A stretch of 64,000 nucleotides of DNA from Podarcis melisellensis (Eukaryota), in the NCBI GenBank assembly GCA_964234715.1, contig OZ174275.1; one strand, 5' to 3'. Shown one piece after another: positions 22,480 through 59,657 of the stretch (positions are counted from its first letter, which is position 1; every line of letters starts with the position of its first letter). Under the pieces are notes generated by a model. That model was not told the origin of the DNA. It made no database searches and saw only the letters and a list, made by a program, of their open reading frames with translations. The translations under genes and the position numbers were made by a program.

Positions 22480-23060
22480 GTATGCGTGCATATATTATGC
22501 ACACGTGTAATTTGCATATGTGTAGTATCATGCATAAATGACAGCCAATTTAAAATGCCATTCTCTAATTTATATGCAAATTCTACCTCTGATAAAATAA
22601 AAAAACATATTTTAAAAGCAGCTTATAATGCTAACACATTATTCCCATGAATGATTCTCAGTAAACTACATATGCTGACTGCAGGGCTCTTTTTTATTAT
22701 TAAATGATTTATTGGATAGAGAACGAACCCACTTAAACTACAGTGGTTCGCATGANNNNNNNNNNNNNNNNNNNNNNNNNNNNNNNNNNNNNNNNNNNNN
22801 NNNNNNNNNNNNNNNNNNNNNNNNNNNNNNNNNNNNNNNNNNNNNNNNNNNNNNNNNNNNNNNNNNNNNNNNNNNNNNNNNNNNNNNNNNNNNNNNNNNN
22901 NNNNNNNNNNNNNNNNNNNNNNNNNNNNNNNNNNNCACCAGGGAATTGTGTACTCCAACCTATTCCCAGTTTGCTTACAGATGCAAATATGCACTCCTCT
23001 CTTTTAACTACTAGAGTGTGGAGATGGAAGTTTACACAAACGACATCAGTTGTGTAAAAA
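22480..23060. promoter_or_regulatory. Candidate enhancer around a masked block (octamer/E-box/PBX-HOX/MEIS cluster)
   Basis: CACGTG 22502, ATTTGCAT 22510, TGACAG 22539, ATGCAAAT 22574, TGATTTAT 22705 and ATGCAAAT 22981 flank the N-run 22756-22935. Confidence 0.5.
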
Positions 23061-24455
23061 CAATGACGGGATTTTCAAAAGTTTTAAAGTGAAAGCTGAT
23101 TTATACATTTGAATTTATGTGAATATAAAAGATAGAACACTTTCAGAAACGCTGAAAAACCAAATCAATAGAATTACTATATCCGAAACAGATCAATGAA
23201 GGGAAAATAATAGAAAATATTTCAAGCTAAAAGCCAAATATTTTTCAGAGGACTATCCTCACAGCCCTACAGATATAAATGTTTAGACTGTGATCCTCTG
23301 CCCAGCTACACACAAACAGCCGCCTTCCTATGGAAATGTTTTAAAATACATTTCCAAAAAGATCCATTTCTAAAAGGCTAAACGTGAACTATAGGGGCAC
23401 AACTAAAACATAAACCCTATTTGGGATGCAACTATTATTGTCTTTTATCATTTCTTTATTTCAGCCTGGATATCTGCATCTGAAATTTGTCAGAATTTAT
23501 CCTAAAGCAAGTGCCCTCTCCTGTGTCTATCCAAGGAATACAAGTCTTGTCTCCTCACAATTAACAGACCTTGTCTGCTGCTGTATCTCACTCCCCACCC
23601 CCACCCCCTGAATGAGCATAGGCTTAAAAAAAGAAAACCCCAACATATACTGTATTTGCTGCTAGGCACTTAAATAGTTGTCTCGTCCATTTTAGTAGAA
23701 CACTGTACTATCCATGAAGCAACGCTTTCTCACTCTCCATCACTGTATTACACAGAGTTAAATGCTGCAAGCCAGAATAAGGATCATCAAATGGTCTAAA
23801 AATGTATGCTACACAAAGGCCTTAAAACACACACACAGTTCAGATCCAGACTGGTATAGTCAATGTCCATGATATTATTACATAAAGGCTAAATAATGCT
23901 AAACTGCATTGTGGAGATAAGTGTACGTAACAAACGTGGGGGTAGGGAGGGGCGTATTCCACAGCGTATTTGCCTTGTTAAAAGCAACATATACAAGCAA
24001 CATATACTAACAAGTGTATATTTAATGTCAGAATCATCTAAATTTTATGTTTCACTAAAGCACAAACTGTTTAGTTCTTAAAATTATGAACAACAAATTA
24101 TTTTTCTACTACTAGTAGATCCAGTTAGACAAACAGCATCCTGAAGGACAATTCATTTCATAGAAAATATGCTGAGTGCTCAAACAAATCATTTTTATTT
24201 ACCCTCACTGCTAAAAATAAAATTTCAACATCCCTGCCATTTTAATCAACTGTGTATCTAAGACAATCCTACACTTTCCATCCCTGTCCGAGGCCCACAT
24301 TAATCAGGTGTTAATTTTTTTAAAAATATATGCTCTAGCTGTTTGGAGTTCATTCAAGGTATTTCATTAGGAGCTTATTCGTTTAAAATAAACGTTCCAG
24401 CCATATCAAGTTTAACCCTTAGTGAAATGTGAATGAATGCTTTAAATGAGAAGAT

Positions 24456-25229
24456 NNNNNNNNNNNNNNNNNNNNNNNNNNNNNNNNNNNNNNNNNNNNN
24501 NNNNNNNNNNNNNNNNNNNNNNNNNNNNNNNNNNNNNNNNNNNNNNNNNNNNNNNNNNNNNNNNNNNNNNNNNNNNNNNNNNNNNNNNNNNNNNNNNNNN
24601 NNNNNNNNNNNGGGAGGGGGAANNNNNNNNNNNNNNNNNNNNNNNNNNNNNNNNNNNNNNNNNNNNNNNNNNNNNNNNNNNNNNNNNNNNNNNNNNNNNN
24701 NNNNNNNNNNNNNNNNNNNNNNNNNNNNNNNNNNNNNNNNNNNNNNNNNNNNNNNNNNNNNNNNNNNNNNNNNNNNNNNNNNNNNNNNNNNNNNNNNNNN
24801 NNGGGAAAACAGCACAGCTCAGAAGAAATGGGATTTGTTCCATTTGCATGATGCTGGCTCCCTTGGGCCCCTTTCTTTCAAATCCACAGCACAAAAGACA
24901 ACACTTAACATATTTGCTTAAAGATGACAACCTCATGTTGATTTCATTTGGATGTAACAGTGTCAGGATTACAGATATGAGAATATATTATATCCGTAAC
25001 AGAGACTGACAAATGTATCCATCAGTAGAACTGTCTGATTCATCTGCTTATACAGCCATTTTGCCATCCCAAGGGTTCCATCTAAGTAGNNNNNNNNNNN
25101 NNNNNNNNNNNNNNNNNNNNNNNNNNNNNNNNNNNNNNNNNNNNNNNNNNNNNNNNNNNNNNNNNNNNNNNNNNNNNNNNNNNNNNNNNNNNNNNNNNNN
25201 NNNNNNNNNNNNNNNNNNNNNNNNNNNNN
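24456..25229. other. Cluster of three N-masked blocks (24456-24611, 24623-24802, 25090-25229)
   Basis: N-runs of 156, 180 and 140 nt. The first two are separated by only 11 real bases. Confidence 0.95.
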
Positions 25230-27334
25230 TAGATCCCCCTGGACTCAATATATTGCTGGTTTTAAGCAACTTTCATTCTATACCATCAAAACTAAGATCA
25301 AAATAAACCAACAGCATATTTTTTTAAAAAAAACAAAAACAAATGTAGATTTTTTTAAAGTACCCATTTTAAAAAGTGTGCTTTAATCCAATTAAAAAAA
25401 ATGTCACTCAATAAGTACATTAAGCTTACTTGGCCACTTAAAGGAATGTGTAGCACAATATCCCGGAATTCACACACCAGCACGTAAATATTTTGATAGT
25501 AGTAGTAACACATTATTGCATTGTACTCCCTTATATTTGGACTTCCAAAAGTGGTTTGTCTTTTTATTTTAAGGAATTCCTCGATGTATATATATTTATA
25601 TCTAAAAACAGACCAGCAACTAGTCTTTAAAGATGCACAATACTACAGAAATGTTGATGTCAACAGACACGCACATGTCTCTGCGGCTCCCTTCTGCGTA
25701 TGATTTTATAGATCAACCCCACCCCTTTCTGATCAAATTAAGCAGTTAGGTAATGGTTTCACTCCATTTCAAAATGCATTACTTTGAATTGTGTATAGGG
25801 GCTTGTTCGTTCTTTCGTTCATTCTCTCTCTCTATCCCTCCCTCCCTCTCTTTCTTTCTCTCCCGCGCCACCCCCTCCCACTACACAAAGTGACTAGGCA
25901 TAATGAAATGCTGGCTGCATGTCTTTGTCCAGAGGAACTCTAAACTGCTTGTTGCTATTTGCTGGCACACAAGAACTGCACCATAATTCACTAGATTGGA
26001 GCTGTTTTGTAAAATGGAGTTAACTGCTGTACGTGGAATTTCAGCCCTGCAGATGGTTACGAATCATTATTTTCAATTTGTTTAGTTTCACATAAGGAAA
26101 GGAGTATGGGGAGGGGGTGCAAGATCAAAATATATGCCGAGGTTGCAGGGCGGGGGGTTAGTGTACTGGTTTGCAGTAACACAGCATTAAAATAATCTAG
26201 TACAAAGTACAAACCTCGTTTAAAAATGCTGAGTATATAACCCCACCTCCTCCTCTTCTTGCATTTTTAAGAAGTTGTTCATTGATCAGAATATTCAGTC
26301 CTAAAATCCAGACCACATACAATTTTTGTTTGTTTTGTTTTGGAAATGGGATTGTCAGGTCTCTAAAAGCAAAGTCATCCTCTGTCACATTTGCCATCAC
26401 TGAAGCCAAAATCATTCTATTCCATAAGTGGCTCAGTTGTCTGAGTGTAAATGGAACATAAAGCATTTATGGACAAGTGCATATGGACAGAAATTGAGCT
26501 GTAAATATATAGGCAGGGCAAATCTTGGAGCCTAGAAACATCTGGGGCTGAAACACAAGATGTGAGACTTATTCTGAAAGTGGCCACTTAATTGCACAGT
26601 TGATTTATACACTTGCTGTTTCGATTAAACAGAATATTAGAAATTTCCTGAAGAGAAATACAGAAAGTGAATGCTTTAGTAAGGATGATTATGTTTCGAT
26701 CTCATTGCAGAATAGGTGAAGGGGGGGGTGGGAAATGGCACTCTCTCTAACACTTCTTTAGAAAACAAATGAAGCATTTCTACTTCAAGGACAAACACTT
26801 AAAAGCTTTTCTAAATTCAAACCAAAAGCATTATTCTACAAAAGGTGCAGCCACCAAGCTTCGGTGTTTGAGAGTATCCTTAAAGCATACTTTGAGCAGT
26901 TAAATGATTAAATAGCTTCACTTTTTAAAAAATCTACATTTGATTATGTTGTTCAAAAGGCATCAACAGAATTAATGCACTTATCAGCATACTTATTAGT
27001 ATTTCATTCTGGAGAGTTGATTCATTTGATTCTGGTGCCACATTATCACAGCTGCCATCAGAGGCATTCAGACATGCCTTCTTCCTAAGCAGTATTAAGG
27101 GGGCCATGAAGACCCTCTTGGTTCGAAAAGCCTCTGCCCTTCTTCACGGCAAAAGAGCCTAAAAAGAAAAGCTGTAAAAGCCATCTATTCAATAGGGTAG
27201 CTTAGAAAGATTAAGGGTTTGGGCTTTTAGGCAAGGGTAGTATATACTGTCAATCATCCACTGGGTTGAAGCTTAATTTTCTCACTGGATTATATTTTCG
27301 GATTTAGCAATTAAAATATTGCCAAAGCAGTATA

Positions 27335-27700
27335 AGATTACATGAACTGCTTGCTGGACCAGAGGAAAGGTCCTTTTAGCATTCTCAGCTCCAACTGTGG
27401 CTAACCAGATGCTCCAAGGATACTCATGAAGGCATGTTGGAAAGAGCTGTATATTGATGTCGTCGTCGTCGTCCCCCCCCCCCCTGCATATACTGTCTCT
27501 GAAATATGAATATCTAATTCTTGGCTCTTATGCTGACAGCTAGGTCTATCCTCCATGAATTTCCCTTACTCTCTTCAAAAGCAGGTTAGCAGCAAGCACC
27601 ATTCATGTGGCAGTGAGTTCTGTAAGTTAAGTGGAAGTAATTTATTTTGTTTCTCCTGAACCTGCTGCTAATAACCGATTTTGATGGCCCTAAATTTTGT
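27335..27700 (-). mobile_element. Old CR1-like LINE 3' fragment
   Basis: Degenerate CR1-type 3' motifs on the + strand (CTGCTTGCTGGACCAGAGGAAAGGTCC..., CTATCCTCCATGAATTT..., TGTGGCAGTGAGTTC). Boundaries approximate. Confidence 0.5.
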
Positions 27701-27793
27701 AGATTGCAAGAGAAAATCTGAAACCGTGAGATGTAACCATGACATTTCAAATCACAAGAATCACAATTCTTATTTCTAGCACTCTGTTTACAG

Positions 27794-27916
27794 CAGGGAT
27801 GGGGACCTGTATGGTGTTAAATTTCCCAATTCGTATCAATCCTAGCCACTGTGGCCAATAGTCAGAGGTGTTTCTTGCCCTGAAACATCTAGAGGGGACC
27901 AGTTTTCCCACTTCTG
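27794..27916. mobile_element. hAT-like MITE (CAGGG...CCCTG type, about 125 bp)
   Basis: Ends CAGGGATGGGGA...TTCCCACTTCTG. Internal TGGCCAATAGTCAG and AACATCTAGAGGG are shared with copies at 37476, 52283 and 59975. Confidence 0.6.
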
Positions 27917-29461
27917 AATTAAAAGAGGCTATTTGAAGAACGTGCAAGTCTAACAGAAATGATGTAGAAACAACCTTCTGACTTGGGTAATACCAAGTCA
28001 GCAAAATGTCACAATAATGTGGCAAGCTTCTGAGTTTTCCAGAACTTTTCATCAGGAAAGACACAAAACAAAGGTTGAGGGACAAGAAAATTTTGGCTAG
28101 ATGTTGTAGCCATGAGGCCAGCTTGTAGAGTTGGTAAGTACCTCCCAGATACTACAGATATTAGGTTACACATCTTACGGGCAACCTCTCTTCAGGAAAC
28201 AAACAATACCAATAATTATCTGTGATCCCAAGAACTGTGATCTCCTAGCAAGGAATGAAACCTTAATATTCAAAAGGAAGTATGGCCCTACTCAGGCATT
28301 TGATTGAATATATGTGGGCCTAAGTGGATTGGGGTTGGGACATGCATGCAAGTTCCACCACTAACATAACGTATCTATGTATGCCGGCTCCACTTTCAGC
28401 CTTCATGTGTTAAGCATGAAGAGATATCCATTTGCTCAATATGTGAAGGTCAGAAGTGGAGCCAGCACATGCAAGGGTGTTGGGCTTGCCTGCGTGCCTC
28501 CAGCCCTCTCCACTGCGGAATACCTGAGTGAGGCTTAGATGCAGTGGGGGGGGGGTGAGGACATCTTTCTCCACAAGGCCAAGTCAATGGGTTTATGTTG
28601 CTCATTCTGGAGAGCAAGTGCCATTGCTTTCTTATGACACAATGCCATGCCAACACCCATAATTTCTCCTCATAATTGCCAATAACATTTCAAAACCCAA
28701 TACGTAGCTTAACTACTCACTTTTAGGAGAGGTACACAAGACTGCAAAGGAGTGGCTGTAGTGTGACTCACTTGTTAAGTGAGTGTATGAGATACAAACA
28801 CAGCTGCACACATATGCTGATTGCCCAGGGGGAGGGGATAGATCTTCATCCCTTAGGTAAGTATTTCTGAACTTTTTGAATACACCCCTCCCCTCCTATA
28901 CTCCTATACCAATCATTTGATGTCCTATGTGCAGACATCCCTGAATGAAGTTGTGTGCACATAGCCTGCTCCAGAACATGATTCTCTGCAGACTGAGAAG
29001 GTAGAGCCACTGCAGCACTGGAAGGAGAACAGAGTAAGAGATCTGATCCCTCCCTATAAAAACCAAGCATTGAGAAAGATAAGCATGAAGCAGGAGCTCT
29101 TTCTATTCTCCTTTCTTCTCAGCTCACATTAGAACTATGGATTTAAACTCAACATATTTCTATTGGCCCAATATGAATCCATCATTATTTTGCTTGTGGC
29201 GTAAAACTTTTTCACCAGACACAAAATATACACCTTTGGATATTTCCAACCAAAGTTCAACTGGAAGAATATGGTCCTATGAACAAAACACTTCTCAATG
29301 GTGTGTTTATCAAATGATACGGATGGTGTATTATATAGTCAGAGTAAGGCTACATCTACCAAACTGAAAATAACTGATCAGTGAACTGAACCTTTCCTTT
29401 CCATCGTCGCTCTCACTCATCTCCTACCCCACCCCCTGCAAGTTCTCCATAGTTTACTTAC

Positions 29462-29520
29462 CAACCTGTGCAGGTCTACTTCAGCCGAGCTTTTCAGGAT
29501 GCTTGTGTACCATTCCTTTC
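29462..29520 (-). other. Putative 59-nt internal non-coding (5' UTR) exon
   Basis: Minus strand: acceptor ...attccatactctcttAG|GAAAGGAATGG... and donor ...CACAGGTTG|GTAAGT. Same strand as exon 1. Length is not a multiple of 3, and the frame left open at the end of exon 1 hits a stop within this exon (ERNGTQAS*). Confidence 0.65.
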
Positions 29521-31149
29521 CTAAGAGAGTATGGAATGTTGCCTTATACAGTACACTCCAGCAAAATTACCATCCTTTCTTTTAATGCATCCTTGTCTAT
29601 ATTTATGCACATCATGGTGACCCAGAAGAGGCCAGAACAGAGCAGGCTTATGCGTGTTCCACCATCATACATGATGACCCAGAACACAACCCCCGTGCAA
29701 ACGGGTTGCCTGTACTAGGAATTCACTTAGTAAATCCATACCTTCCAAAAATTCAGATGAGAAGTAGGTAATAGTTTGAAAAGAAAAGATTCACTCCCTG
29801 AAGACATACCCATCTCTTTAGATGTGGCAGGAGGAGTCAGTTCTGGAAGCTATACTAAAATGCATGCCTAAATAGTACCAGAACAAACAATAAAGTAAAA
29901 AAAAAAGGTACAAAACAACTAGACTAAGAGCAAACTCTTCATTCAGAATATGTAACCAAAGTTGACTGATACCTTATGGGTTCATCTTTCCAGTCTCACT
30001 TTGGTGACATTTGTAAACTAGTAGAAACAGACCCAATTCATAGATTATCAGCAGCACTGGTTTTCTAGTAGAGTTTGAAGGAAGTAATTATGTGAACAGG
30101 AATGGCAACACAATTTCTTCTAAACCAAAGTGATCCGTTTCCAGCTAAACAAAGTAACCACATCACATGCACACACCGTTGTTCTTATACAGTATTACTT
30201 TCAGAATAATGAATTTGCTCAAGCCACACCAAACTTTTAATAAGAAATACATTGGGGGGGGGGAAACAACTCCTAACAGTGATTTATTTATAAAACAGAA
30301 CACAACCACTTTATAATATGATCATGGGCCATCCAGAAAGTATAAAGCAATTCAACTACATAAGAACATGAATCATTCCCAAAATAAAATTATAAACAAG
30401 CCTCTTACACATGTATCTTAAGTTTGTAAACAAAGTCAATGAGAGGTGTGGGCTTGCTTTTTCCAGGAAATCTGATTTATATCAGGTCCAATTTGAGTCA
30501 AACAAATTCTTATCTCATCAACACAAATAAGCCTTTCTCTTTTCTCCTTTCTGATTTTCATATTTATCAGAGTTGAAAATCCCCGTTCACAACAGTATGA
30601 CATAGAGAACTGTAGAATCCATGAAATTTATTTCATTTCCCTAAATAATCAGCAAAGATTTTTTTTCCACACAGTGCAATACTACTGCTAGTCAATAACT
30701 GTATACACATCTGTGTGGAACATGCACTTTCCAGCCCCCCCACCAACTGCCTTGGGAATAAGTGTTGCTGCTTGCAGGTCACTTGTGAGGGATTTTTTTC
30801 CTAGTACACATACTACTAAAATGTAGCAACAGCAACTTCCCAGAAGAAACGAAACAGCTTTTCTTCAAATGAAGAGCTATATTTTTTCTAAATACGCTGA
30901 ATAAAAATGTTTTAAAAGACAGAAAAACTCATAAGTTAGCAGACACCCTAATAAAGCTTCATATCTCATGAACCATGCATGCCTTCTATCTAATAACGGT
31001 ACTACTTGAGCTGAAAGAACTGCATTTCCCCACTAAATAATATTGCCACTTGAGCACTGAGAAAACCCTATCTCTCAACTATTTTGTGCCAAAAAGTCTG
31101 GAACATGGTCAGCAAACAAATTCACTCAACTGGCACAGAAAACAGCTAA

Positions 31150-32790
31150 GAGTTTGAGCTGTGGGTGGTCACTCCCAAAAGCAGATTCCACAACCTCCTC
31201 CAGGGATTGTTCAACAGCTGTACAATCCTGGCAACTTCTATTACTGGTATGGCATAATCATACTCTTAGATCAAACCAAGTAGAAAACAGTTTCCAAATG
31301 TAGCATCGACTACAAGCGCATGGAGTGCAAACCCATCCAGAACAAGCAACTGACCTATTTCCTGGACCTGGGAACCACTGACCCACACCAACTGTTTCCA
31401 GCTCTGTTTATTTAGTCTTCATCCAGCCATACCCGACAGTTGGGTGTCCTCAGAGTATTAAAAACACCGCACTCCAAATCCCCTAATAACAAACAGCTCC
31501 CAACAGCTTCAGTTTATGGTAAAAAGAAGCAAGGCTACATTCCCTTTATGGTCTATGAATGTCTGCAGTTACACTACCACAAATATTGGGTCCAGGTTGC
31601 GCTTTATCATCAGTGGCTGTACCATGGTACCTTCTTAAGGCTCTGGACATGAGACCCTCACAGAAAGCTGCATTAAGCACGCCTCGATCTAACCAGTCAT
31701 ACACTTCTGACTAGATCTGAGCCAAGAGGGACAAGGATTGAGAGAGCTTGTAGTCAGCTGCGTTATTGCAAGCATTGTGGGTGGTAGTCAACTAAATTTT
31801 ACTAAGAGTAGACCCACTGAAATTAATGCGCATGACTAAGGTCCATTAATTTCAATTGGTTTACTTTGAGTAAAACTTAGCTGAATACCACCCCTTGTCC
31901 ATTTCATCAGGCCTCATCCACTAAAACAGATGCCACAAAAAAGGGAAATATGTAATACTGTATGCTTCCCTACGAACAGTCGTAACTATGGCGTCAAAAT
32001 GTTTGGAAGATGAGTGCCCTTATCCTCAAAATGTTGTGCAAACATTTCACAGTGCATCTTTACAAGCTCCCATGGGGTGTCCTCCATGGACAACCTCCTC
32101 TGTACCACCCTAAAGAGTTCTGCTGGACAGCTGTTTGAGAATGCAGTAGAGATGGTAACGTCTTTTGCTGTCCCCTGCCAGATGGTAGGCACGATTAACT
32201 GGTGTTTGGACAGAACTTTCCACCAGCTGCACTATTGTTGTAATCCAGCCTGCTTCATTGCCTACAAGTTCAAAGAATTTCAGGAAGCTCCACATCACCA
32301 GAGAGGACACTCAAGAGTAATCACAACTCTGGAGCTTCAAGTCTTGCTGTTCCACAATGCAAGAAAGGCCTTGACAGGATTGTCAGCTTTATCCACTGGA
32401 AAATCCTCCACAGCATTCGGGAATCCATCACATTCCATAACTATCCAAGGATGGACCTGCAGGGGGAATGTGGCACCAAAAGCCACTAGGAAATAGTCCA
32501 ACCATTACAGTGCAATTTCTCTAACTGCACCCTCCCCATTACTAGACCACCAGCCATGCAATCTGCATCAAAGTCCAAACTGAGGGTATGTCCCACTCTA
32601 TGTGCCAGGCCAATGGCAACTTGAGATAGCCCCATGGTTGTCATGGAGGTCATGAAGTCCCAACCCAGTGCAGGCAACCTCTTTTCTGTGTTCAAGGACT
32701 TTCCACACTTACACCTAGCTTTCCTGTGCACCATAGACAAGTCCCACTTTTAGTATTAAAGGCACTCTAGATATTGTTAATTAGTCTCTT
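31150..32790 (-). mobile_element. Decayed L2-clade LINE ORF2 (APE endonuclease to RT region), interrupted by a hairpin MITE
   Basis: Minus ORF 32486-32740 contains DFMTSMTTMGLSQVAIGLAHRVGHTLSLDF, matching the APE endonuclease PTH-GHTLDL region of L2/CR1 ORF2. Multiple stops and frameshifts downstream. Boundaries approximate. Confidence 0.75.
31779..31893. mobile_element. Palindromic (fold-back) MITE inserted in the L2 fragment
   Basis: 50-bp inverted arms (42/50 complementary): GGGTGGTAGTCAACTAAATTTTACT...AGTAAAACTTAGCTGAATACCACCC, with a 15-nt spacer. Confidence 0.75.
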
Positions 32791-35077: not shown

Positions 35078-35270
35078 AATTTTATTTTTTATTGCATTCA
35101 TGCCTTCCCTTTCTTCCAATCAACTCAGTACAACGTATTTTGCTCTCCTCCTCCCCATTTTGTCCTCAAACCACTCTGGTAGGTTAGGCCAACAGAGTAT
35201 GTGACTGGCCCAAGGGTTACCTTGCAAGAATCATGGCTGAGTGGACCTGGGTCTAGCCAACACACTGGCT
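35078..35270 (-). mobile_element. Degenerate tRNA-derived SINE (Squam3-like)
   Basis: + strand CCCCATTTTGTCCTCA...AGGTTAGG...GTGACTGGCCCAAGG...ATGGCTGAGTGG...CACACTGGCT is the reverse complement of the same SINE consensus. Confidence 0.6.
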
Positions 35271-44798: not shown

Positions 44799-44819
44799 AT
44801 CATCATCATCATCATCATC
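44799..44819. repeat. (ATC)n trinucleotide repeat
   Basis: Direct read. Confidence 0.9.
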
Positions 44820-46284: not shown

Positions 46285-47507
46285 NNNNNNNNNNNNNNNN
46301 NNNNNNNNNNNNNNNNNNNNNNNNNNNNNNNNNNNNNNNNNNNNNNNNNNNNNNNNNNNNNNNNNNNNNNNNNNNNNNNNNNNNNNNNNNNNNNNNNNNN
46401 NNNNNNNNNNNNNNNNNNNNNNNNNNNNNNNNNNNNNNNNNNNNNNNNNNNNNNNNNNNNNCATCAACGAAAAGGGGATCTCAGATCACAAGAGAAGAAA
46501 GAAAGGGGGGGGGAGAGAAGAGCACATGANNNNNNNNNNNNNNNNNNNNNNNNNNNNNNNNNNNNNNNNNNNNNNNNNNNNNNNNNNNNNNNNNNNNNNN
46601 NNNNNNNNNNNNNNNNNNNNNNNNNNNNNNNNNNNNNNNNNNNNNNNNNNNNNNNNNNNNNCAATACGCCCACCGTGCTGTCCCCCCTCCCTCCACGATG
46701 ATGTGCTTACATTTTACTGCATCAGCTTCTCTTGACATATTCACGCCCCCCCCACCCTGAACTAAAACACGGCAATTTAACCCTAACTTTCCCCTTCCGC
46801 CGATCCTCATTCGCACTAATTTGCTTAAAAGTTCGTTCCCCCAATACACCTAAGTCGCATCTTATCCGCGCGTTCCTGCTTGGACTCCAATTTGAAAAAA
46901 ATAAAAGAGACCCACTTAAGCGAAAGTGGATTTGGCGGCGGGGTGGGGTGGAGGGGGAAGCTCTAAATCTCGCAATCGCGAACTCTTGGGCTCCTGACTA
47001 TTGTTAGCAACGATCAAGGAAGGGGGGGGAACCATCCACCGCGATGCTATCTCTTTACTTTCCACGCTGCGCTTAGATGAGAAAAACGGAACGGGGGGAA
47101 AAAAGAGAAAAGAATAAACCAGTCTGGAGCATGTCCTATATTTAAATATAGATTTAAAGCATTATGGCTTAGATTTAATATTTAAAAGGCACACGCACAA
47201 AATTTAAAGCGCCCGTAGCCGCCTGGGATATATTTAAAATTATATAAAATTTTAAACAGAGCGGGCGGGAGGGGGGGAGGATGAAGAGAGACGAACGGCA
47301 ATGGGAGATCTTACCTGGAGGTTTGGTAGAGAAGCCCGGTAGGTTAGAGCTGCATCGATCCTATCTGTTCGCTGANNNNNNNNNNNNNNNNNNNNNNNNN
47401 NNNNNNNNNNNNNNNNNNNNNNNNNNNNNNNNNNNNNNNNNNNNNNNNNNNNNNNNNNNNNNNNNNNNNNNNNNNNNNNNNNNNNNNNNNNNNNNNNNNN
47501 NNNNNNN
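46285..47507. other. Cluster of three N-masked blocks at the promoter/first exon/intron start (46285-46461, 46530-46661, 47376-47507)
   Basis: N-runs of 177, 132 and 132 nt. Confidence 0.95.
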
Positions 47508-47800
47508 ATGCCAGCAGCTGAACGCCTGCGCAGAGCGCCGCCGAGCCAAATTCAAATCACTTTCACACTCGGAGCCAAAGATCAGTTTTCAAAAAAGAGA
47601 GCGAGAGAGAGAGAGAGAGAAGAAGGTGGGGGGGATATCGGGAGGGAGAGAGAGAGAGAGGCACCAGATTCATGGGCAAGAGGAGGAGGAGAGGAAGCTC
47701 AATGGCCGCGCGCTACTGCCGCCGCCGCCGCACCACCACCACCACCACCAGGCCCCTGGCTGCACAGGTCAGGTTACATGGTAGGGGCTGTCGCTTGCAA
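47315..47800 (-). other. Putative non-coding first exon (5' UTR) of a minus-strand gene or lncRNA; 5' end approximate
   Basis: Minus strand reads ...CTACCAAACCTCCAG|GTAAGA (GT at 47314-47313) inside the CpG island. Part of the exon (47376-47507) is N-masked. No long ORF; contains the mini-uORF ATG CAG CTC TAA (47355-47344). Confidence 0.7.
47718..47750. repeat. (GCC)4 followed by (CAC)6 repeat in the promoter/first exon
   Basis: GCCGCCGCCGCCGCACCACCACCACCACCACCA. Confidence 0.9.
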
Positions 47801-48740
47801 GGAAGCCTGCAAACACTGCCTGGAGGTGGCCGGGAGGTCATGGCAGAGCAGCCAGGAAGCTCTCCCGCCCCTCCCGCGGCCGCCAAAAGGCGAATCGGGA
47901 ACTTGGGGAGTTGGGATCCCTGCTCCCAACCTCGCCTCCGCCTCCTGCAGCAAGAGAAACACTTCTCCCAGCTCGGGCACTTTCCCTGCAGCCGGGAAAG
48001 CGCCATAGCCCGTCCCATCCCCCCAACCCCCCCCCCCAGCAGCGGCGGAGAACGTCTCTGCCTCCCCCCCACCCCACCGCCCGGTCCCCACCTCGCAATA
48101 AGCAACAGCGGCGGCGGCGCCTCCAGCTCCAGGCCCTACCGCAGCTCAGTGGCAGTAATGCCTCTGTGCAGCCCGCTCGCCGTCGACTCAGCTCCCTAGA
48201 CTTTAGGATGCTGCGCGGCGGCAACAGCCGAGAGCGGCTGAAGCAAGAGAAAGACCGGGAAAGGGGGGGGGGGAGCCCGATCCTGCTCTGTGTGCTTGCT
48301 CGCGGGTAAAGAGTAAAGTCGCACTGTATGCTTATGGAGTTTTCCGCACCCCCCGGGTAAGAAACTGTGTGCGGCAAAGGGGATAGCAGCCTGAATGATG
48401 CAGGATAGCAGCAGACATTAGACTTTCCCCCCTAACAGTTGCCTTTTATTCCCGCTGTCTCCACTTGAAAGTTCCTTTGCGTGCAGGATCCCCTGCTCGC
48501 ACTTGCTCCAAATGACGTTTCACGGCACCGTCCTGCACAAGTTCTTTCCTCACAAAGAAATTTTCCGCTGGGTTGAAGAGAGTGTTCACTGAGCAAATAA
48601 AGCCGCACTTCTTTCGGAATAGGACCCAGTGAATTCAGTCGGGGCATTATTTCTTAGTAAATCTCTGCAGTGGATACAGATGTAATATCCCATTAAACTC
48701 TTCAGAGTGTTTCTGTTTACTGTACTAGGATGGTGCTGTG

Positions 48741-49070
48741 GGGCTGCAATCTTAGGTATGCTTTCTTGGAAGTTCTACTGAATTGTTCTCTGTTTAAAAG
48801 GACTTCCCTGTGGATCCAAACTGGCAGCACCATCTGAGGTGAGGTGCTGAGTACACCAGGAATCTCCCACAGGATACATGGGAGTGGGAAGACAAAATAT
48901 ACCAAGGCTGCAATCCTAAATTGCCAAGGACCAAGTCCTGTTGAAATACTTGAATTAGTTCTGAGTAAAAATACTTTGAGGTGTGATGTCATTAAAAAGG
49001 CTTGCTTGGAAGTGAGTCCAGTTTGCATTGTGATAGTTGTAAACATGCAAAGGGTTTGGCTGTACCTCTT
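48741..49070. mobile_element. Cluster of 2-3 decayed copies of the GGCTGCAATCC palindromic MITE
   Basis: GGGCTGCAATCTTAGG (48741), AAGGCTGCAATCCTAAA (about 48904), CTTGGAAGTGAGTCC...GTAAACATGCAAAGGGTTTGGCTG (about 49005-49062). Confidence 0.55.
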
Positions 49071-50378
49071 GCGATCCTCTGTGTTATCATTTGCAAGTGT
49101 CAGTTTCTTCACCTGTAAAATGGGCATCGTTAATACTAATTTTTAGTATAATCTCCAAGAGTTAATTTGAGCCCAGACTGAACAGAGATAAGTCTCTGGA
49201 ATCAATTTTTATACAGCAAGTCCCATCTCTCCTTTATCTCCTATTAGTGAAATACCCCATAATTTGAGCTGTGAAAGTTGATTAGAAAGAATCTAGCCAT
49301 CAGAGTGGCTCCTTGCAAATCCCTTGCTACTTACAGCTCAGGGAACATGCCCAGCAGCTTCAGGGATTAAGTGTTTAGGATCAGATGGCCACCGCACCTT
49401 CTTAAGAGGTATGGATGGGTGCGTTCTGGTGCTTTGATATCAAAAAAATACATGTTTGCTTATGATTTGATATCTCTTTACAACTGAATGATTCATAGTT
49501 GATTATGTGAACTACTTCCATTGACTTTTACTGCATTTGCAGTGATGTGATATGATAGTTCTGTTTGTGTTGCTACAAGTGCCTTTGTTGTACCTCACAT
49601 ACAAATAATCACTTGCCTGTTTGTTTGTTAGTTTAATTGTTGTTGTGTGAGGAACATGCACAGACAAATCCAAACCTTAGAGTTAGAACCTTTTTGATGG
49701 AATCCATTCTCAAATGCTTTGCTGCAGGGACCCACCAATGGTCTTTTGTCTTCGAGCAAAATCCACTTGTCACTTTCAGTGCCTTAATCAGAAGCTACAT
49801 CTCTCAATCTGCGACACCCCCCCCCCCCACTTTAAAGGCAAGCTGGTGTTCATCTCAGGCTTTTCATACCCTTCCTTACCTTATTATGTTGGATGCAATG
49901 AATACTTTTTCACAGTCCATTTTGGGAGGGAAGAGTTATGTTGCCACATTGCATATGCAAGTTAAAAGCCCAGACAGAGGATCTAACACAGGGAGTGGCA
50001 TTTTATCCCATGTTTCCCTTTTGTCATTTATATTCTGCACTAGTACCTTGAGACTCACCTCTGTGTACACAGAAAATAAGCCCCAGTGATTTCTATAGAG
50101 CCTGCTCCCCAGGAACTGGGCATACGATGGTAAACCTTTGGATTTTCTTCAGGTTAACACCAGTGTACTTGCAAAGCAGCCAGAAGGTGAGAAGGTAGAG
50201 CAACTCAAACATCTCCTTAATGTGTATTCCAGTGCCAGAAGACTCAATGGGACATTATGCATGCCAGAACGGCAAATTCCCAGCTCTATGAAAAGGACTG
50301 TCATAGAAAGTAGCGTGGAATAGTCTTCTGTCCAGTATAAAAATAAACATCCCATGGAGCTTGCCTTTGTGCTGCTAA

Positions 50379-50471
50379 CAGTGCAGTCCTAAACATATCT
50401 CCTGAGAGGTATATCCCACTGAGTTCAGCAGGACTTCATCTCACCCGTGTGAGTACAGAATTGCAGCCTTA
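50379..50471. mobile_element. GGCTGCAATCC-family palindromic MITE, decayed
   Basis: CAGTGCAGTCCTAAACATATC...CCCACTGAGTTCAGCAGGACTT...AGAATTGCAGCCTTA. Confidence 0.6.
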
Positions 50472-51714
50472 ATGTGGGACTTGTCAATCCATTATGTCTT
50501 ACTCATGTGCATATAATCGTTCACATTGCTCCAATTTTATGTGTATGGGGTTGTTGTTTTCTCTTGCAGGATTGCTAAGCTCTTTCTTTAACTACACTTC
50601 TCCAACCATATAGCCCAAGCATGTGCATGTTTGCTCAGATAAAAGTCTAAATTTAACTCAGATGAAAGTCCAAGTACCATGCACACTTACCGGCAGCCGT
50701 GTCCCAATATACATTAGTGTATATTATTAACTTGCATGTCCATCAGTTAACTATAGTTTTCAGTTAGGTGCAATTTATATTCATATGCTTCCTTTCACAA
50801 GCCTCTCCTTCCCTTGCATGCTATATATAATACACAAATAATACACAGTCCATGTTGGTCCCTTCCAGAGTAGATCCTATTAGATTATTAAATTATTTCT
50901 CATAATATATGTAACCTTTTACAGCTTTAAATCTGTATGGAAATATGTGCAATGTTTGGGTTTGTAATCCTTCCTGGGACCTTGTGGTAAAGGATGAGTA
51001 AGAAATCAAATAAGTAAATAAATCGTTCTCTGCATTAGGAGAAACAATTCCTGCATGCTCATAGTGGGAAAGGGATATTTCCTTCTGATATCAGCCCCTC
51101 ATGCCTTGTGGGTTGCCTAACCTTGAGCCCCCACGCTGCACATATTTCCATATAGATTTAAATTGCCCTCCAGACACTTAGGATTACAACTCAGCTGCAG
51201 CCATGGGAGTTGTAGTCCAAGAAACTGGAAGGCACCAGGTTGGAGAAGACTTTCCCACATCCTTACCTTGTCTTAGGGAAGCCTGATTTTCCTCTATGGA
51301 GAAAATAGCTCCAGAGATGTTGATATCTTCTTCCTGCCAAGCAAGAAGGCCAAGCAAGCACCTGCTGCTTTTCTTGTACATCCTCCCCAAATGAATGATC
51401 AGTGCTGTCAGCTCTGATGGCACTGGTTGTGTATTTGTGGAAGGGCCACGGGTAAGAAAGGGTGGGGGAAGAGAACATCAGATCTGAATTTGACACCTGT
51501 ACTAATGGCCAGGGACAGCCTACAAACTTCAGGGGTCAGCACTCTCTCTATATGTGTCTCTCCCCTATTACCATTCAAGACTCCTTCTCCTATGACCTTT
51601 ATTGCATGAAGTGAACATGGCATCAACAGGAAGCAAGGCATTTGTTGCTGTAGCTCCAAGGCTGTGGGATAATATCCCACAATGTTTGGTTGAATTCATC
51701 CCTCCTAGCCATTA

Positions 51715-52215
51715 GGGGGCCGGTGACCAGACAGGCAGCCCTTTTGGTCATGGCACTCCATCTGTAGAATGCTCTTTGCAGAGAGGTTCACTTGGAGGCC
51801 TCTTTGATGTTTTGTTTGGCACCACGTAAAGGCTTAAAAAAAAAAGGGCAGGCATTTCAGCATATAGCGTAAGTTATCTTGACTGTTTTTATCCATTCTT
51901 TTGAATTTAATGGCTTTGTTTTGTTTTAATGGCCACTTCTTTTATTTTCTTTTATCACACTGGGAGTTTTTAGTGAAGGACTGAATAGAAATCTTCTAAA
52001 TAAATAAATGAAACATATCTGTTTGGAAAGACATTTGGTCAGTAAACAAATATTGTATGCCTATCTGATATAATCTGCTGAGTTCAATGTCCTGTGCTTT
52101 TAATTTTAGTGTTGCCATTTTTACATGAGGATGTCGTTTTATTTTATTATAGATTATTGTTGTGAGCTGCCTCAAACTTGTAGAATTCGGACACAAATGC
52201 TATAAACAAATAAAG
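51715..52215 (+). mobile_element. L2-like LINE 3' end(s), degenerate
   Basis: GCCCTTTTGGTCATGGCACTCCATCTGTAGAATGCTCTT (AFSV-AP-LWN-LP-like), then a T-rich 3' UTR, GTGAGCTGCCT and an ATAAA tail. Confidence 0.5.
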
Positions 52216-52282
52216 ACATTTCCACAGGAACATAAGAAGCTGTCTTATTGCTCAGCGAAGCTCGGTATTGTCTCTAACACAC

Positions 52283-52410
52283 AGATAACCTGTGGCATTC
52301 AGTATGGTGCTGGACTGCAGCTCCCATCATCCCTGATCAATGGACATTCTGACTGGAGGACTGAGAACTGGAATCCAACAACATCTGGAGGGCCACAGGT
52401 TCCTAATCCT
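52283..52410. mobile_element. hAT-like MITE (same family as 37476)
   Basis: AACCTGTGGC...GGACTGCAGCTCCCATCATCCCTGA...TCCAACAACATCTGGAGGGCCACAGGTT, imperfect palindrome. Confidence 0.7.
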
Positions 52411-52574
52411 TTTATTTATTTGTAGATAGACGGATAGAGAGGTAGATTGAATTTATATACCACCCTAAACCCACAGGTATATCCTTGACTCTGACCGCCC
52501 AGGGTTTTACACAGGAGTTTTTTCTAGCCCTGTCTGGAGATGCTGAGAGACCACCCTGCTACTGTCACATAGAT

Positions 52575-53160
52575 TGTCAGGGCTCGAATCAGACACAGGT
52601 CAACAATAAAATAAGTAGATATCAGCTATCAGTTAACTCTTTCTGCAAGAAAACGGACATGCAACTTGTGGTCTCAGCAACATGGCCCAGTAGGCCTTGT
52701 CCCTATGAAGCAGTTGCCAGGACTGAAGGTCCCTTCCTTTCACCCTCACTAAAGCTCCTTCTCTCCTGGATGGTTCCCAAGCAGTCTCAAACTGTGTCTG
52801 TGCACCTCTGATCTCTGTTCTGATCTTCTCATTACTTTGCGAGTTCTGGGAGACCAGGGAGGAGGGGAGCTTGCAACAGCAGGAGAGGGAGACTCCCTGG
52901 ATTCTTCAGCAATCTCTTGACGCCCCTCCTCCTCTGCTTTGGCCTCAGAGTCTAAACTGCTTTTCACAGGCTCGTCCTGCTCACTAAACCCTGTTGCCCC
53001 TTCAGCATCCAGCACCATCTTCCAATCTTTTCTCTCTGACCTCTCCTTGGTGTCCTACCACAAATCCCCTGGCTATGAACCTTCCTTCTCCGAGGTTTCC
53101 ATTGGAGGCTCCCCAGTTGCTGCCTCCCACCACACCTCTTTGTCCGGCCAGTCCCTGATA
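52575..53160 (-). mobile_element. Solo LTR (Gypsy/ERV-type), about 586 bp
   Basis: Termini TGTCAGGG ... CCCTGA(T)A give the TG...CA inverted ends of an LTR (one C>T change). No internal gag/pol adjacent. Contains a decayed acidic reading frame on the minus strand. TSD degenerate. Confidence 0.65.
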
Positions 53161-53772
53161 CATATCTATGTTGTCAGTACTGAAAGGAAGAAGAATAAGA
53201 AGAATTTTATCATTTGTACATCGCCCATCTCACTGGGTTGTCCCAGCCACTCTAATAATGCGTTAGATCAGCCTTCACAGTGTCCAGCCATGGGGAGTTG
53301 GAGTACCAAACATCTGGAGAGCACCAGCTTGGCGAAGGCTATGTTAGGTGTTTCACTTAGGGATGCTCAAGCACTAAAGATAGCTCTCTTCTTCCCCAGC
53401 ACTATTGTTTGTATGCAGAAGGACCAATCCACAAATAGTAAATGGTTTCAATTTATAAGAGCTGGTTCACTTAGTTGTTCCAAGATGGGACTAGAGATTT
53501 AAATATCTCCAAAGACCATTCAGATCATTCTAATGGGGCAAGTGCTGCATAAACTATATTCTTAGATAAAATTAATTATGGAACAAAGTTCCATATTTTC
53601 CTTGCCTCCTGTGCCACTACCTCCTGGCATGTGTGCCATTTGTAAAAAAGAAGAAGAAGAATTCGTGTTCGTGTAAAATAAACCCTTTGTACGTGCACAC
53701 ATGCACACATTCTGGTTTTTTTGCTATATAAAGAGATGTCACCATAGCCTGTGGACATTTTGACAGCTCTAT

Positions 53773-53945
53773 GAGAGCTAGTGCAGTGTGTTGGAGGAAT
53801 GAGCTGTGAGATAAATCAGTTTGGATCTCACCTCAACCATGCACTTGGGGAACCTTAGGTGAACCTGTTAGCATCAGCCCTCAGCACCAAAGTAATTTGA
53901 GGTCTACTATATTGGCCTACTATAAAGATTTGTTGCAAGGCTCAC
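53773..53945 (+). mobile_element. Degenerate tRNA-derived SINE
   Basis: GAGAGCTAGTGCAGTGTG head, TTTGGATCTCACCTCAACCATG B-box region, GTTGCAAGG core. Confidence 0.4.
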
Positions 53946-54633
53946 AGCCTATGTGCTTTTACTTGGAAGTTAGGCCCAGTGCCAAGCAAGAATACAATTC
54001 TAGGCATGTCTGCTGATTGCGTTCCAAGTATGGATGAGACACTAGTCCTGCTGATGTTATGTATTTTGTCCCAGAGTGCTTAAATCACCACTAACATCAG
54101 CACGAAAAGAGGGTAGCTCCATCAGGTGCCCTTCTGTGAGGACTGCAGCTACCATGACGATGGCTGTCTGAGAGAAGAACTGTGTGGTGGGAGCAACCCT
54201 GTTCTTCTGGCCAAGACATTGTCACCTGCTCTGTTCCTAGATCTGGTGTTGGATGGAGAGTACTTCCAGGGAGGAACTGGTTTTTATCAAGGACAAGAGA
54301 GACAGAACTTAGGAAGTGTTGTTTATATCAGCCAGCCAGAAATCTGCATAGACACATCTGCATTAGAAGAATGGTCACTTCAAGAACTTGAGCTTGAGCT
54401 TGATTCTGCTTCCTCTCTCATATTCCCTTTTCCTTATGTAAGCTGCTCTGGGAGGGTTTTGACTAAAGTATAGATTAATTTTATCATTTCTGCTTCATAA
54501 ANNNNNNNNNNNNNNNNNNNNNNNNNNNNNNNNNNNNNNNNNNNNNNNNNNNNNNNNNNNNNNNNNNNNNNNNNNNNNNNNNNNNNNNNNNNNNNNNNNN
54601 NNNNNNNNNNNNNNNNNNNNNNNNNNNNNNNNN

Positions 54634-54727
54634 GAGGCTGCACTCCTATACACATCTACTCAAAAGTAAGTCTCATTGAGTTCCATGGGGCTTGCTCCCA
54701 GAGTAGTATATATAGGATTGCAGCCTC
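54634..54727. mobile_element. Short palindromic MITE (GGCTGCAATCCTA...TAGGATTGCAGCC family), best-preserved copy
   Basis: GAGGCTGCACTCCTATA ... TATAGGATTGCAGCCTC arms with an internal AAGTAAGTCTCATTGAGTTCCATGGGGCTTGCT hairpin. Confidence 0.75.
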
Positions 54728-57700
54728 AAGAAAAAATATTTTTAAATGTAAGGTATAAAGACTTCAACTTTCTCCACCAATCTACAGTAAAATGCAACAA
54801 ATGGAATCAAAGCAAAAACTACATCAATAAAACTGTTTCTCAACCCCTTTATACTATTACTCTACAAATGGACGGCATCACTTAACAATATTGTGCATTA
54901 ACAATACAATAAGTTCTCTAATAAGTTTCCATGAAATGACAATTTATTTAAAAACTCATCATTTGTAATTCTATTCTCATAAGACCATTTAGATGCATGG
55001 GTCTTTTCAATTCTAATAGACCTGCTAATAGTCCCTCACAAAAGAATTTATTCAGGCCCTTGACCTCAGATTGATACAACTGCACCACATAATCAGAATT
55101 AAGAGATGAGTCAAAGTAATATTCAGTAGTATCAAGGGGGTCAAACTGGTCCTTCAGCAACCCATGTACCATACATGCGAAGGTGATTTCAAAATCACTG
55201 CAGCAACCCCTTTCCCTTTGTGGTGTCTGAAGCCTTTGTACACACTTTTAGGAACAGTTTTGTCAATAAAATATTTAGCATACTATTCATACAGTCCATA
55301 GATTTTCTTTGTGAAAAGAACAATAGTGGGAAATCACGATTATTATTATTTTTAAGTATACTGAGCGGGATTTACAGGAAGGTCTTAGAGACCTGCCAAT
55401 ATACATTTTTATATTTTAAAGGAACGCAGCAGAAACCCCAGATTCAATTCCACAGCAAATGAAAATAGCTGTAAAGTTATATATAAGAACTGATAATCAG
55501 ATTGAGATTTTCCTACTGCATACGAGTCAGGTAAACAATCACAAATATTTTCTACATATCTCAGGGTGTGAGCAAGTGCCCATTTTGATTGGGGGAGAAG
55601 ATTTGGTCATACAGTGACCACAGTTTGGATGTAACAGTAAGCTATCGCTTCACATTATGTGAATGAGCCTCGGACTTGTGTGCTTTCCCCTATTATTTCT
55701 TCCCTGGAGTGGTTGCAAGAAGATCAAAAGAGTTTGCATCTTTTAAAAACCACTCATTACTCATTATGTCCGAATCTAGGTTTAGCTTTGTGCTTTAGAA
55801 AGGGGTAGGGAACCTTTCCCCTATGACTCACAGGAAAAAAAACAGTTGGGTGTGGCAGCTGGTACCAGGCATAGTAGCAACCAATGTTTGCTCAAGCCAG
55901 AGCCGGGGGGGGGGGGCAAAAAACATATGATCTGCCTCATATAGCTGTCTAGTAGGTAGAAGGAATCAGCAAAAATGAGGTACTCTGACTTTCAGGAATA
56001 AAATGCTTTCTGGTGCAGCAAAGCCACCAATGGATACAACCTATTAATTTCATTAACTCTGTGTTGGGTTATGGCCAAGAGTGTTTTAAAAAACAAAGTG
56101 AAGAGGTCAACTCATCAGCAAATACAGATCCCCTTGCCTCCAAAGTAAAACGCCATCATGAAAATACTTTACACCAGCTTAGGTTCAGGCCCAAAGTGTA
56201 TAAAGGTTTTTCAGAACAGGCTCCTTAATTCCCTTGAATCTGCATTATGTTATGTAGTCTGTTGATGCTTGAATTAATGTGCAAGTTGTTAATCTCTCTA
56301 GACCTGGATTTAAAATTAGACAAAGCAATAATTAGTTTGGCACCATCATTTTGCTACCCAGAGAGTAATAATATAGGTCATAAAATACAAGAGAGCCCAT
56401 TACAAGTTTTTTTTTTAACACATTGTTACTGGGGAAAGATACATAGGTGCAGAAATTTGAAAATAAATTATGGTTAGGCAGCAAAATAAATTAATGGTTT
56501 TTTTGTGAATCCAACCCTATGGCTGATCTTTTTGTTTTTATTAGCATTTTAATGCTAAAGTGGCGAAGCAGCCACATCTAGAACCCTCAAGGAGCTGCTG
56601 TTACCAATTTGCCAAGCACTCCCCTATTGCATCCATGCTGACCTTGACACTGTTGTGGCAAAGTCAGAGAATGATGGGACCTCGGATACCATTGAGCACT
56701 GCTAGGCCAGGCAACTTTCAACTTGTTTCCCCTGAGACTGTGGACTAACTGCTTGGAGTGGTGAGGCTAGTCCTTAAAGACTCCTCATTAAAAAGCCAAA
56801 TTCTTTGGCCGTAGACAATAAATAAATAAATATATTGAAAACAAAATTCAGGATCAGGATTGTGATTGTGATGCACAACAAGCAGTGTTTTAACCATTTC
56901 TCCCCACACCAGTATCAATGACACCCCCCTCCCTAACTGTTGATACTGGTAGTGAAGCTTTCACTGATATTAATATTTAGATTTTCTTACATTGCAATCA
57001 TCACTTTAGAGCCTCATCTGAATGGTTTCTGAATTCTGAGCTTCCCCCACCTCTAAATATTCCAGAAAATGTGCCTAATTACATTCTGAGAATACAAGCC
57101 TGAAACAGGATAAACATGGAATAGCCACATAGAAAGCATAGTCCTTTTGTATGTGCATCTCAGTTTGTTTTCAGGACAAAAGACTGCAGAGGAACAATGC
57201 AATTGCTTGCATTGGCTACTTTGTCCTGCCTTCCAATCACTCTTGCTTTATTTTTAGTTAAACATGAGAGATCAGGAAGTCATCAAATATCATAATTGGT
57301 CTTGATTTCTCAGGATATTTTGAGCTACATGCCATATCCAACAACAGTACATTGGCATTGTATTGAATCATTATGTTAAAATATCTCAGTATCCAGTTGC
57401 ATATATTTTGCAAGTATTTAATTGCATGCAAAAAGCATCACATAGCAACATTAAGTATGTGTGTGTGTATACATAGCACTACACAAGTGCATAAATAAAC
57501 AGAGAGCGGAAGAGATAGGTATAGAATGTAGATTCATTGCTATAAATGCATATATATTCATAACTCATTTAATGCGGAGCTTCTTGTGTAATGCAAGCCA
57601 CTGATACAAAGTTGCTAATGATAATTATAGAAGTGATGCTGATTTAGTCATTTCAAGANNNNNNNNNNNNNNNNNNNNNNNNNNNNNNNNNNNNNNNNNN

Positions 57701-58879
57701 NNNNNNNNNNNNNNNNNNNNNNNNNNNNNNNNNNNNNNNNNNNNNNNNNNNNNNNNNNNNNNNNNNNNNNNNNNNNNNNNNNNNNNNNNNNNNNNNNNNN
57801 NNNNNNNNNNNNNNAACCAGAAACAATAATTTGCAGAAAGCATCTCATGTACCACAGCTGACTGCTGCAATCATTTGGTCAACCTGTTAAAGATCAAACA
57901 GTATTCTTCACTATTCTCAGTGGTATCTTTGTAATAAAGTAGCAGCAAACAGACAATGTTTGCTTCTGGTCAGTTTTAAAGAATGTTCAGTTTATCAGTA
58001 GAGACTTTAATCTCAAGCTTCATAGAGTACAAAGAGAACATTGATCCTACTGTGTTGTCCTTTAGGCCACAAGGCATGAGCATTTTTACATTCATTTGTC
58101 ACAAAGCAAAAAAAGAAAGAAGGAAGTTAATACTTTGAAAACACCAAATGCCATCTTTTAAAACAGAATAATTTCCTATTTCTTTCTCTCTCTCTTTCAT
58201 CCCCCAACTCATCTTTTTTTTTCTTCCTGCTATCTGATTAGGCTTCTGTTCCACCATACTTCACAGTTGTAACTAGTGGAGAAGAGCTCCAGTGCAGGAT
58301 TTCATGATTCTGGATTCCCGCCAAGTCACCCATTAGCTAGTGACCTGGTGCTCGTGTTGAATGGAGCAATATCATTCATACAGGTCCACTGTTTTGGGTT
58401 CTGCTGTGAGTAGCCTACATGAAGAATGGCACTTTACCCCAGTTAGGTAAAGAAATGTGTCACAACCAGAGTAATTATTTCTGGTGAGACCAGGTCTGCA
58501 GATGAAAAGGAATTAGATTAAATTCACACTATGCGTGTCCTGCAGTTTATTTTGCATTTTCATTTACAGAAATAAAACAAAATGAATTACTTCCTTGACC
58601 ATAGAATTGTTACCCCCCCCCCGCAAAAGTTGCTGCAAAAAGAATAGTGTATGCAGCACAATAGGCCTATGCAGGCATATCTTTATCAGAGTGAAGGGCA
58701 ACAAGTATGCCAGCTCTTTCCCCACATTACAGACCCTATTGCTTTCCCATGAGTTGGATCGCTTTTGAAGTGGAACACCTACTCTGCTCATGGAGGTTGC
58801 TCATGACCAGGCCACACTAACCCATGATTTAATTATACAAAACGTTGAGCACTGAAAATGGCTCAGAAAGGTCAGCTGG

Positions 58880-59278: not shown

Positions 59279-59657
59279 TCAGGGTTTAAAATCACACAGG
59301 GAGCCTACATGAGTAGGCTGGTTCCCCACTACAAACGCTAGCCTGCAACTGAAGGAGAACAATAAGGGCAGTTATGGGGGCATGGGGTGGAGCTGGGATG
59401 CTCAACCCCACACTCCTTCAGGTAACAGCATTTGGAATTAGGATGACTAAATAGGACTAGTAAATAAATAAATATTCCAATAGGGCATAGGACTGCAGCC
59501 TAAGAACACCTGTATTTCCTATTGGCTGATGCTTAGGTAGATATCCCCTCACTGCTCTTGGTTTTATAATGGGCTCCAGCTGAGCTTCTCATTAGCAGTC
59601 TGTTCCCTCTTCTGTTTTGCATGAAACAATGTGGCATATCTGGTCCTGATCCACCAC

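What the first reader, a model, noticed from the sequence alone, without database searches (positions are those of the whole stretch)
22756..57814. N-runs have quantised lengths and probably mark deliberately masked, deeply conserved elements
Seen: nine N-runs of 180, 156, 180, 140, 177, 132, 132, 132 and 156 nt (22756-22935, 24456-24611, 24623-24802, 25090-25229, 46285-46461, 46530-46661, 47376-47507, 54502-54633, 57659-57814). The minimum of 132 recurs three times, and eight of nine equal 132 plus a multiple of 8. Two runs are separated by an 11-nt island, which is implausible for scaffold gaps. Most sit in repeat-poor, TF-motif-rich sequence, and one lies inside the putative first exon. Inference: a k-mer filter with padding (for example a screen against human sequence) blanked stretches identical to another genome. 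If so, the Ns map the most conserved non-coding elements of the locus and the most informative bases are hidden.
Basis: partly seen in the sequence, partly recalled or inferred. Interest (0 to 1): 0.7.

Follow-up and report, generated by a model that had tools for sequence, protein, structure and literature searches.

The report
The nine runs of N are almost certainly blanks that a sequence screen put over short stretches resembling human DNA, not holes in the assembly. They are a by-product of data preparation that probably marks ordinary, deeply conserved regulatory DNA.

Summary
There are nine N-runs of 180, 156, 180, 140, 177, 132, 132, 132 and 156 nt at the stated places, and no other N in the window. 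Eight of nine equal 132 + 8n; the chance value is about 4e-6.

The starts are not in one phase modulo 8. Islands of 11 and 68 nt lie between runs. The borders are unique, complex DNA with no edge duplication. Perfect microsatellites of 34 and 61 nt are left unmasked. This fits a seed-and-pad mask, for example 32-nt words sampled every 8 nt of a reference plus 50 nt of padding on each side. It does not fit scaffold gaps.

This scan has already noted the same thing in many other windows of this lizard genome.

- No coding or RNA family was found in the window.
- Three runs sit at or in a 2-kb CpG island.
- The gene of the locus was not identified.

Low interest.

The parts
22756..22935 (.). N-run, 180 nt (132 + 6x8). 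Under the 32-nt word / 50-nt pad model the core 22806-22885 holds an exact match of 80-94 nt.
   Evidence: borders are unique and complex with no edge duplication; octamer sites at 22510, 22574 and 22981
24456..24611 (.). N-run, 156 nt (132 + 3x8); modelled exact core of 56-70 nt
24612..24622 (.). 11-nt purine-rich island left readable between two masks. Two padded intervals just fail to touch here.
24623..24802 (.). N-run, 180 nt (132 + 6x8); modelled exact core of 80-94 nt
   Evidence: octamer site at 24842
25090..25229 (.). N-run, 140 nt (132 + 1x8); modelled exact core of 40-54 nt
46285..46461 (.). N-run, 177 nt, the one length off the 8-nt grid (132 + 45). It is best read as two seed groups in different phase whose pads merged, from a small insertion or deletion against the reference or from two separate matches.
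   Evidence: inference
46462..46529 (.). 68-nt readable island between two masks, purine-rich
46530..46661 (.). N-run, 132 nt (minimum size, one seed word); at the left edge of the CpG island
46600..48700 (.). CpG island: CpG observed/expected 0.6-1.2 against 0.23 for the whole window, GC up to 0.71. Probably a promoter with a non-coding first exon; the strand is not settled.
47376..47507 (.). N-run, 132 nt, inside the CpG island and about 100-250 nt downstream of A/T-rich TATA-like sequence at 47130-47260
54502..54633 (.). N-run, 132 nt, solitary
57659..57814 (.). N-run, 156 nt (132 + 3x8), solitary; modelled exact core of 56-70 nt

Best explanation
The nine N-runs are blanks written by a sequence screen during data preparation. 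They are not unread DNA. The screen looks for fixed-length words shared exactly with a reference, most likely human DNA. It merges neighbouring hits and overwrites them, plus a fixed pad on each side, with N of the true length. The shortest possible blank is word + 2 pads = 132 nt, for example 32 + 50 + 50. Longer exact matches add steps of 8 nt, because only every eighth word of the reference is indexed, or because lengths are rounded in eights. On this model the hidden exact matches are about 32-46 nt (132), 40-54 (140), 56-70 (156) and 80-94 nt (180). In a lizard, unique non-coding DNA that shares such words with human is expected to be deeply conserved regulatory sequence. Here that would be a roughly 2.5-kb block at 22.7-25.2 kb, the edge and inside of a CpG-island promoter at 46.3-47.5 kb, and two solitary elements at 54.5 and 57.7 kb. 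Shown: the lengths, the phases, the islands, the clean borders and the non-coding setting. Inferred: the word and pad sizes, that the reference is human, and that the hidden DNA is conserved non-coding sequence of true length.
For: Lengths are 132 + 8n in 8 of 9 runs and the minimum occurs three times (P about 4e-6). The starts fall in residues 4, 0, 7, 2, 5, 2, 0, 6, 3 mod 8, so the 8-nt step is not a grid on this genome but belongs to the reference or to a rounding rule. Islands of 11 and 68 nt lie between runs. Borders are unique and complex, with no left-right duplication and no repeats. Perfect (AC)17 (34 nt) and a 61-nt (ATAG)n array are left unmasked, so the screen does not simply catch simple repeats. 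The piece is at least 75 Mb long (distance given), so nine gaps in 35 kb would be out of character. Other readers and follow-up agents reported the same pattern in other windows of this genome (s1-494230, s1-501871, s1-508139); these are leads, not independent proof. Setting: no Rfam family, no Pfam family in the 96 longest stop-free frames, and a CpG island at 46.6-48.7 kb. Human ultraconserved elements are known to be recoverable in lizard genomes: all 197 tested were found in the tegu (PMC6304105). Screens for human sequence based on 32-nt words exist (STAT / sra-human-scrubber, PMC8450716).
Against: Nothing here shows directly that the sequence is continuous across any run or that the run length equals the true length. 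The mask rule (32/50/8) is fitted to nine numbers, and other splits of 132 fit equally well. One run (177) needs an extra assumption. The identity of the reference (human) rests on the operators' and tools' wording. The published STAT scrubber samples by minimum hash per 32-nt segment and would not give steps of 8, so this is a different implementation.
Confidence: 0.85

Rival explanations
1. The runs are genuine assembly gaps whose lengths were estimated by the assembler or scaffolder.
For: The scan's program labels six of the nine places as assembly gaps. I could not show continuity across any run.
Against: Estimated gap sizes have no reason to sit on 132 + 8n with a thrice-repeated minimum. 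Fixed scaffolding gaps would all be one size. An 11-nt and a 68-nt contig between gaps are implausible. Nine gaps in 35 kb on a piece of at least 75 Mb are out of character. The borders are unique and complex, without the repeats or edge duplications usual at real gaps. The simple repeats in the window were assembled through.
Confidence: 0.05
2. The runs are deliberate masks, but some were triggered by something other than deep conservation: chance or low-complexity words shared with the reference, or a screen against a different list.
For: Two pairs of runs flank purine-rich islands (24612-24622, 46462-46529), so purine-rich low-complexity words could lie beneath. The filter message itself says it 'also trips by chance'.
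Against: Perfect (AC)17 and a 61-nt (ATAG)n array are not masked, so simple sequence is evidently not what triggers the mask. A random 32-nt word is not expected to be shared by chance between two 1-3 Gb genomes. Five of the nine runs have fully complex borders. Longer runs (156, 180) need several consecutive word hits.
Confidence: 0.07
3. The masks hide highly conserved coding exons of a gene, not non-coding elements.
For: An earlier follow-up in this genome found N-runs over conserved coding parts of a gene (s1-508139). Frames cannot be judged under N.
Against: Stop-free stretches running out of the run borders are short, at most 68 codons, outside the GC-rich island. The 96 longest frames of the window match no Pfam family. 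Flanks of the 22.7-25.2 kb cluster are only 32-40% GC. Exact lizard-human matches of 80-94 nt are unusual for coding DNA because of synonymous change (established knowledge).
Confidence: 0.08

Closest known systems
K-mer screens for human sequence, such as NCBI STAT / sra-human-scrubber (PMC8450716)
   Same: A 32-nt word with 50-nt pads gives exactly the observed minimum of 132.
   Different: STAT picks one minimum-hash word per 32-nt segment and discards whole reads. Here intervals inside a genome are overwritten with N, with padding and an 8-nt step, so this is another implementation whose rule I can only infer.
Ultraconserved and conserved non-coding elements of vertebrates (Bejerano et al. 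2004, as used in PMC6304105)
   Same: They are unique, non-coding and repeat-free, clustered over a few kb and at a CpG-island promoter. Exact matches to human of tens of bases in a reptile are what such elements give.
   Different: The definition (at least 200 nt identical in human, mouse and rat) cannot be tested with the letters hidden. The target gene is unknown.
Scaffold gaps in genome assemblies
   Same: Both are written as runs of N inside a long scaffold.
   Different: Real gaps are either one conventional size or unquantised estimates. They do not leave 11-nt islands, and they tend to sit at repeats. None of that holds here.

Membership tests
Seed-and-pad mask from a word screen | A fixed minimum length (word + two pads) that recurs | tested here: met
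   132 nt occurs three times and nothing is shorter
Seed-and-pad mask from a word screen | Longer masks grow in fixed steps | tested here: met
   8 of 9 lengths are 132 + 8n, P about 4e-6. The 177-nt run needs two merged seed groups.
Seed-and-pad mask from a word screen | Placement is independent of assembly problems: unique, complex borders and tiny islands possible | tested here: met
   Islands of 11 and 68 nt; no edge duplication and high complexity; no repeats
Seed-and-pad mask from a word screen | The hidden letters match the reference (human), and the run length equals the true length | not testable with these tools
Assembly gap | One conventional size, or unquantised estimates, between real contigs | tested here: not met
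   Five distinct sizes on an 8-nt grid; 11-nt and 68-nt 'contigs'
Assembly gap | Listed in the assembly's gap table | not testable with these tools
   The source assembly record is not available here
Ultraconserved / conserved non-coding element | Long, near-perfect identity across distant vertebrates | not testable with these tools
   Letters are hidden. There is only the model-based inference of exact cores of 32-94 nt.
Ultraconserved / conserved non-coding element | Non-coding, unique sequence | tested here: inconclusive
   The flanks and the whole window show no Pfam or Rfam family and almost no repeats. The masked cores themselves cannot be judged.
Ultraconserved / conserved non-coding element | Clustering around a developmental regulator gene | tested here: inconclusive
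   The CpG-island promoter is present, but the gene was not identified

The most novel reading that the evidence does not exclude
The 22.7-25.2 kb block hides an exceptionally conserved enhancer: four exact human-lizard cores of 40-94 nt within 2.5 kb, ringed by four perfect octamer (POU-factor) sites. It would serve a divergent CpG-island promoter of an unidentified, possibly non-coding, gene, and its logic would not yet be described.
Probability: 0.04. Interest if true: 0.35.

Novelty: not a real feature. Interest (0 to 1): 0.08.

Why it matters
The value is mainly practical. Readers should therefore not treat them as gaps, as frame breaks or as biological oddities. They should also expect the best-conserved enhancers, promoters and exons of animal genomes to be the parts they cannot see. 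The biology underneath, conserved non-coding elements near a CpG-island promoter, is of a well-known kind.

Tried and rejected
(1) I tried to lay reads across the runs to test continuity. 

(2) Rfam at gathering and at E-value threshold gave only sub-threshold, low-complexity miRNA-like matches far from the runs.

(3) Pfam on the 96 longest stop-free frames found no family above noise, so no coding exon and no gene name.

(4) Earlier-findings look-ups for a gene name near the window gave none.

(5) Self-comparison for repeats showed the whole window is repeat-poor, so the test does not single out the run flanks.

(6) The motif enrichment test was positive only for the octamer, which I had noticed first. 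Homeodomain, SOX, MEIS, PBX, FOX, E-box, TEAD and GATA motifs are not enriched.

(7) Open-frame extension from the run borders was not informative.

(8) I rejected a grid on this genome's own coordinates, because the starts are in seven different residues mod 8.

(9) I rejected simple-repeat masking, because (AC)17 and (ATAG)n are unmasked.
Full report
Observation. Eight lengths are 4 mod 8, that is 132 + 8n with n = 6, 3, 6, 1, 0, 0, 0, 3. Only 177 is off the grid. The 11-nt island at 24612-24622 is real, and there is a second island of 68 nt at 46462-46529.

Gap or mask. Several independent features speak against unread DNA:
- The sizes are neither one conventional value nor free estimates. 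They sit on a grid with a recurring minimum.
- The starts fall in residues 4, 0, 7, 2, 5, 2, 0, 6, 3 mod 8. The 8-nt step is therefore not a tiling of this genome. It belongs to whatever the sequence was compared with, or to a rounding rule.
- Readable islands of 11 and 68 nt between runs are what two padded intervals leave when they just fail to touch. They are not contigs.
- The borders are unique, complex sequence. There is no left-right duplication, and no second copy in the window, of which only 0.9% is self-similar.
- The window's real simple repeats, a perfect (AC)17 of 34 nt and a 61-nt (ATAG)n array, were assembled through and are not masked. Assembly trouble is therefore not expected in this unique DNA, and the mask is evidently not triggered by simple sequence.
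- The scaffold is at least 75 Mb long (distance printed), so nine gaps in 35 kb would be out of character.

Other readers and two follow-up agents reported the same pattern in other windows of this same lizard genome (s1-494230 'all five 4 mod 8', s1-501871, s1-508139, among others). I treat these notes as leads, not as proof.

How the mask most likely works (inferred). Exact words of fixed length shared with a reference are found. Overlapping hits are merged, and a fixed pad is added on each side. Word + 2 pads = 132, and the roundest split is 32 + 50 + 50. An 8-nt step follows if only every eighth reference word is indexed. The exact matches underneath would then be about 32-46 nt (132), 40-54 (140), 56-70 (156) and 80-94 nt (180). 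The 177-nt run would be two seed groups 45 nt apart and out of phase, from a small insertion or deletion against the reference or from two separate matches, with merged pads. A published relative of such a screen is NCBI's STAT human scrubber, which also uses 32-nt words (PMC8450716). Its minimum-hash sampling would not give steps of eight, so this is a different implementation.

What probably lies underneath (inferred, not seen). The window looks like non-coding vertebrate DNA:
- GC is 0.39 and CpG observed/expected is 0.23.
- No Rfam family was found.
- No Pfam family was found in the 96 longest stop-free frames.
- Only short open stretches run out of the run borders.

Four runs form a block at 22.7-25.2 kb. 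Its middle pair alone implies at least 247 nt containing two exact cores of at least 56 and at least 80 nt. Three runs sit at the left edge of, and inside, a 2-kb CpG island at 46.6-48.7 kb. Two runs are solitary, at 54.5 and 57.7 kb. In a lizard, unique DNA sharing such words with human is what ultraconserved or conserved non-coding elements look like. All 197 tested human ultraconserved elements were found in the tegu genome (PMC6304105). A neighbouring note (s1-494032) also places deeply conserved non-coding DNA 4.5 kb before the window.

Four of the window's eight sites lie within 300 nt of the first block. I tested that motif after seeing it, and ten other motif classes are not enriched.

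The 'putative first exon' is not established. The strand skew switches at the island. From 1 to 46 kb the + strand has A>T (z 10.5) and C>G (z -5.3), the signature of minus-strand transcription. From 48.7 to 64 kb it has T>A (z -3.2). A divergent promoter is therefore possible and the strand is open.

What could not be done.

The test asked for first, continuity across the runs, was attempted with read laying.

The Rfam searches were split at 47507 and 47571, and the second batch of frames avoids that place.

The run search found the stretch in whole-genome runs of one organism (0.81-0.94 of the sampled words) and of five relatives (about 0.6), all under coded names. No run on record as RNA holds it. 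The gene served by the CpG island was not identified.

Verdict. The mask reading is well supported (about 0.85). The reading that the runs hide conserved elements is plausible but untested here. The pattern is a product of data preparation, was already found repeatedly by this scan in the same genome, and hides biology of a known kind. Low interest; classed as not a real feature of the genome.

Noticed in passing
window 22510, 22574, 22981, 24842: Four perfect octamer sites (ATGCAAAT or its complement) ring the first block of N-runs, out of eight in the whole window. This hints at a POU-factor-bound enhancer, but the test was post hoc.
   Followed up: partly
window 46600-48700: A 2-kb CpG island (CpG observed/expected 0.6-1.2, GC up to 0.71) has A/T-rich TATA-like sequence at 47130-47260, GA and CCA/CCG runs, and possible splice donors near 48307 and 48357 on the + strand. 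No protein-like frame was found.
   Followed up: partly
window 1-46000 versus 48700-64000: The strand composition switches at the CpG island. To the left, the + strand has A>T and C>G, a minus-strand transcription signature. To the right it has T>A. This suggests divergent transcription from the island.
   Followed up: partly
window 14178-14603 (+): A stop-free frame reads like the C-terminal part of a LINE-type reverse transcriptase, probably a decayed retroelement fragment. Pfam gave no hit at E 0.01.
   Followed up: no
window 1965-2183 and 5907-6116: An inverted pair of 219-nt copies at 83% identity, probably two copies of a short interspersed element. It is the only sizeable repeat in the window.
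   Followed up: no
window 15555-15588 and 21492-21552: A perfect (AC)17 and a 61-nt (ATAG)n microsatellite are both left unmasked. They serve as an internal control showing that the mask does not fire on simple repeats.
   Followed up: yes
   Followed up: no
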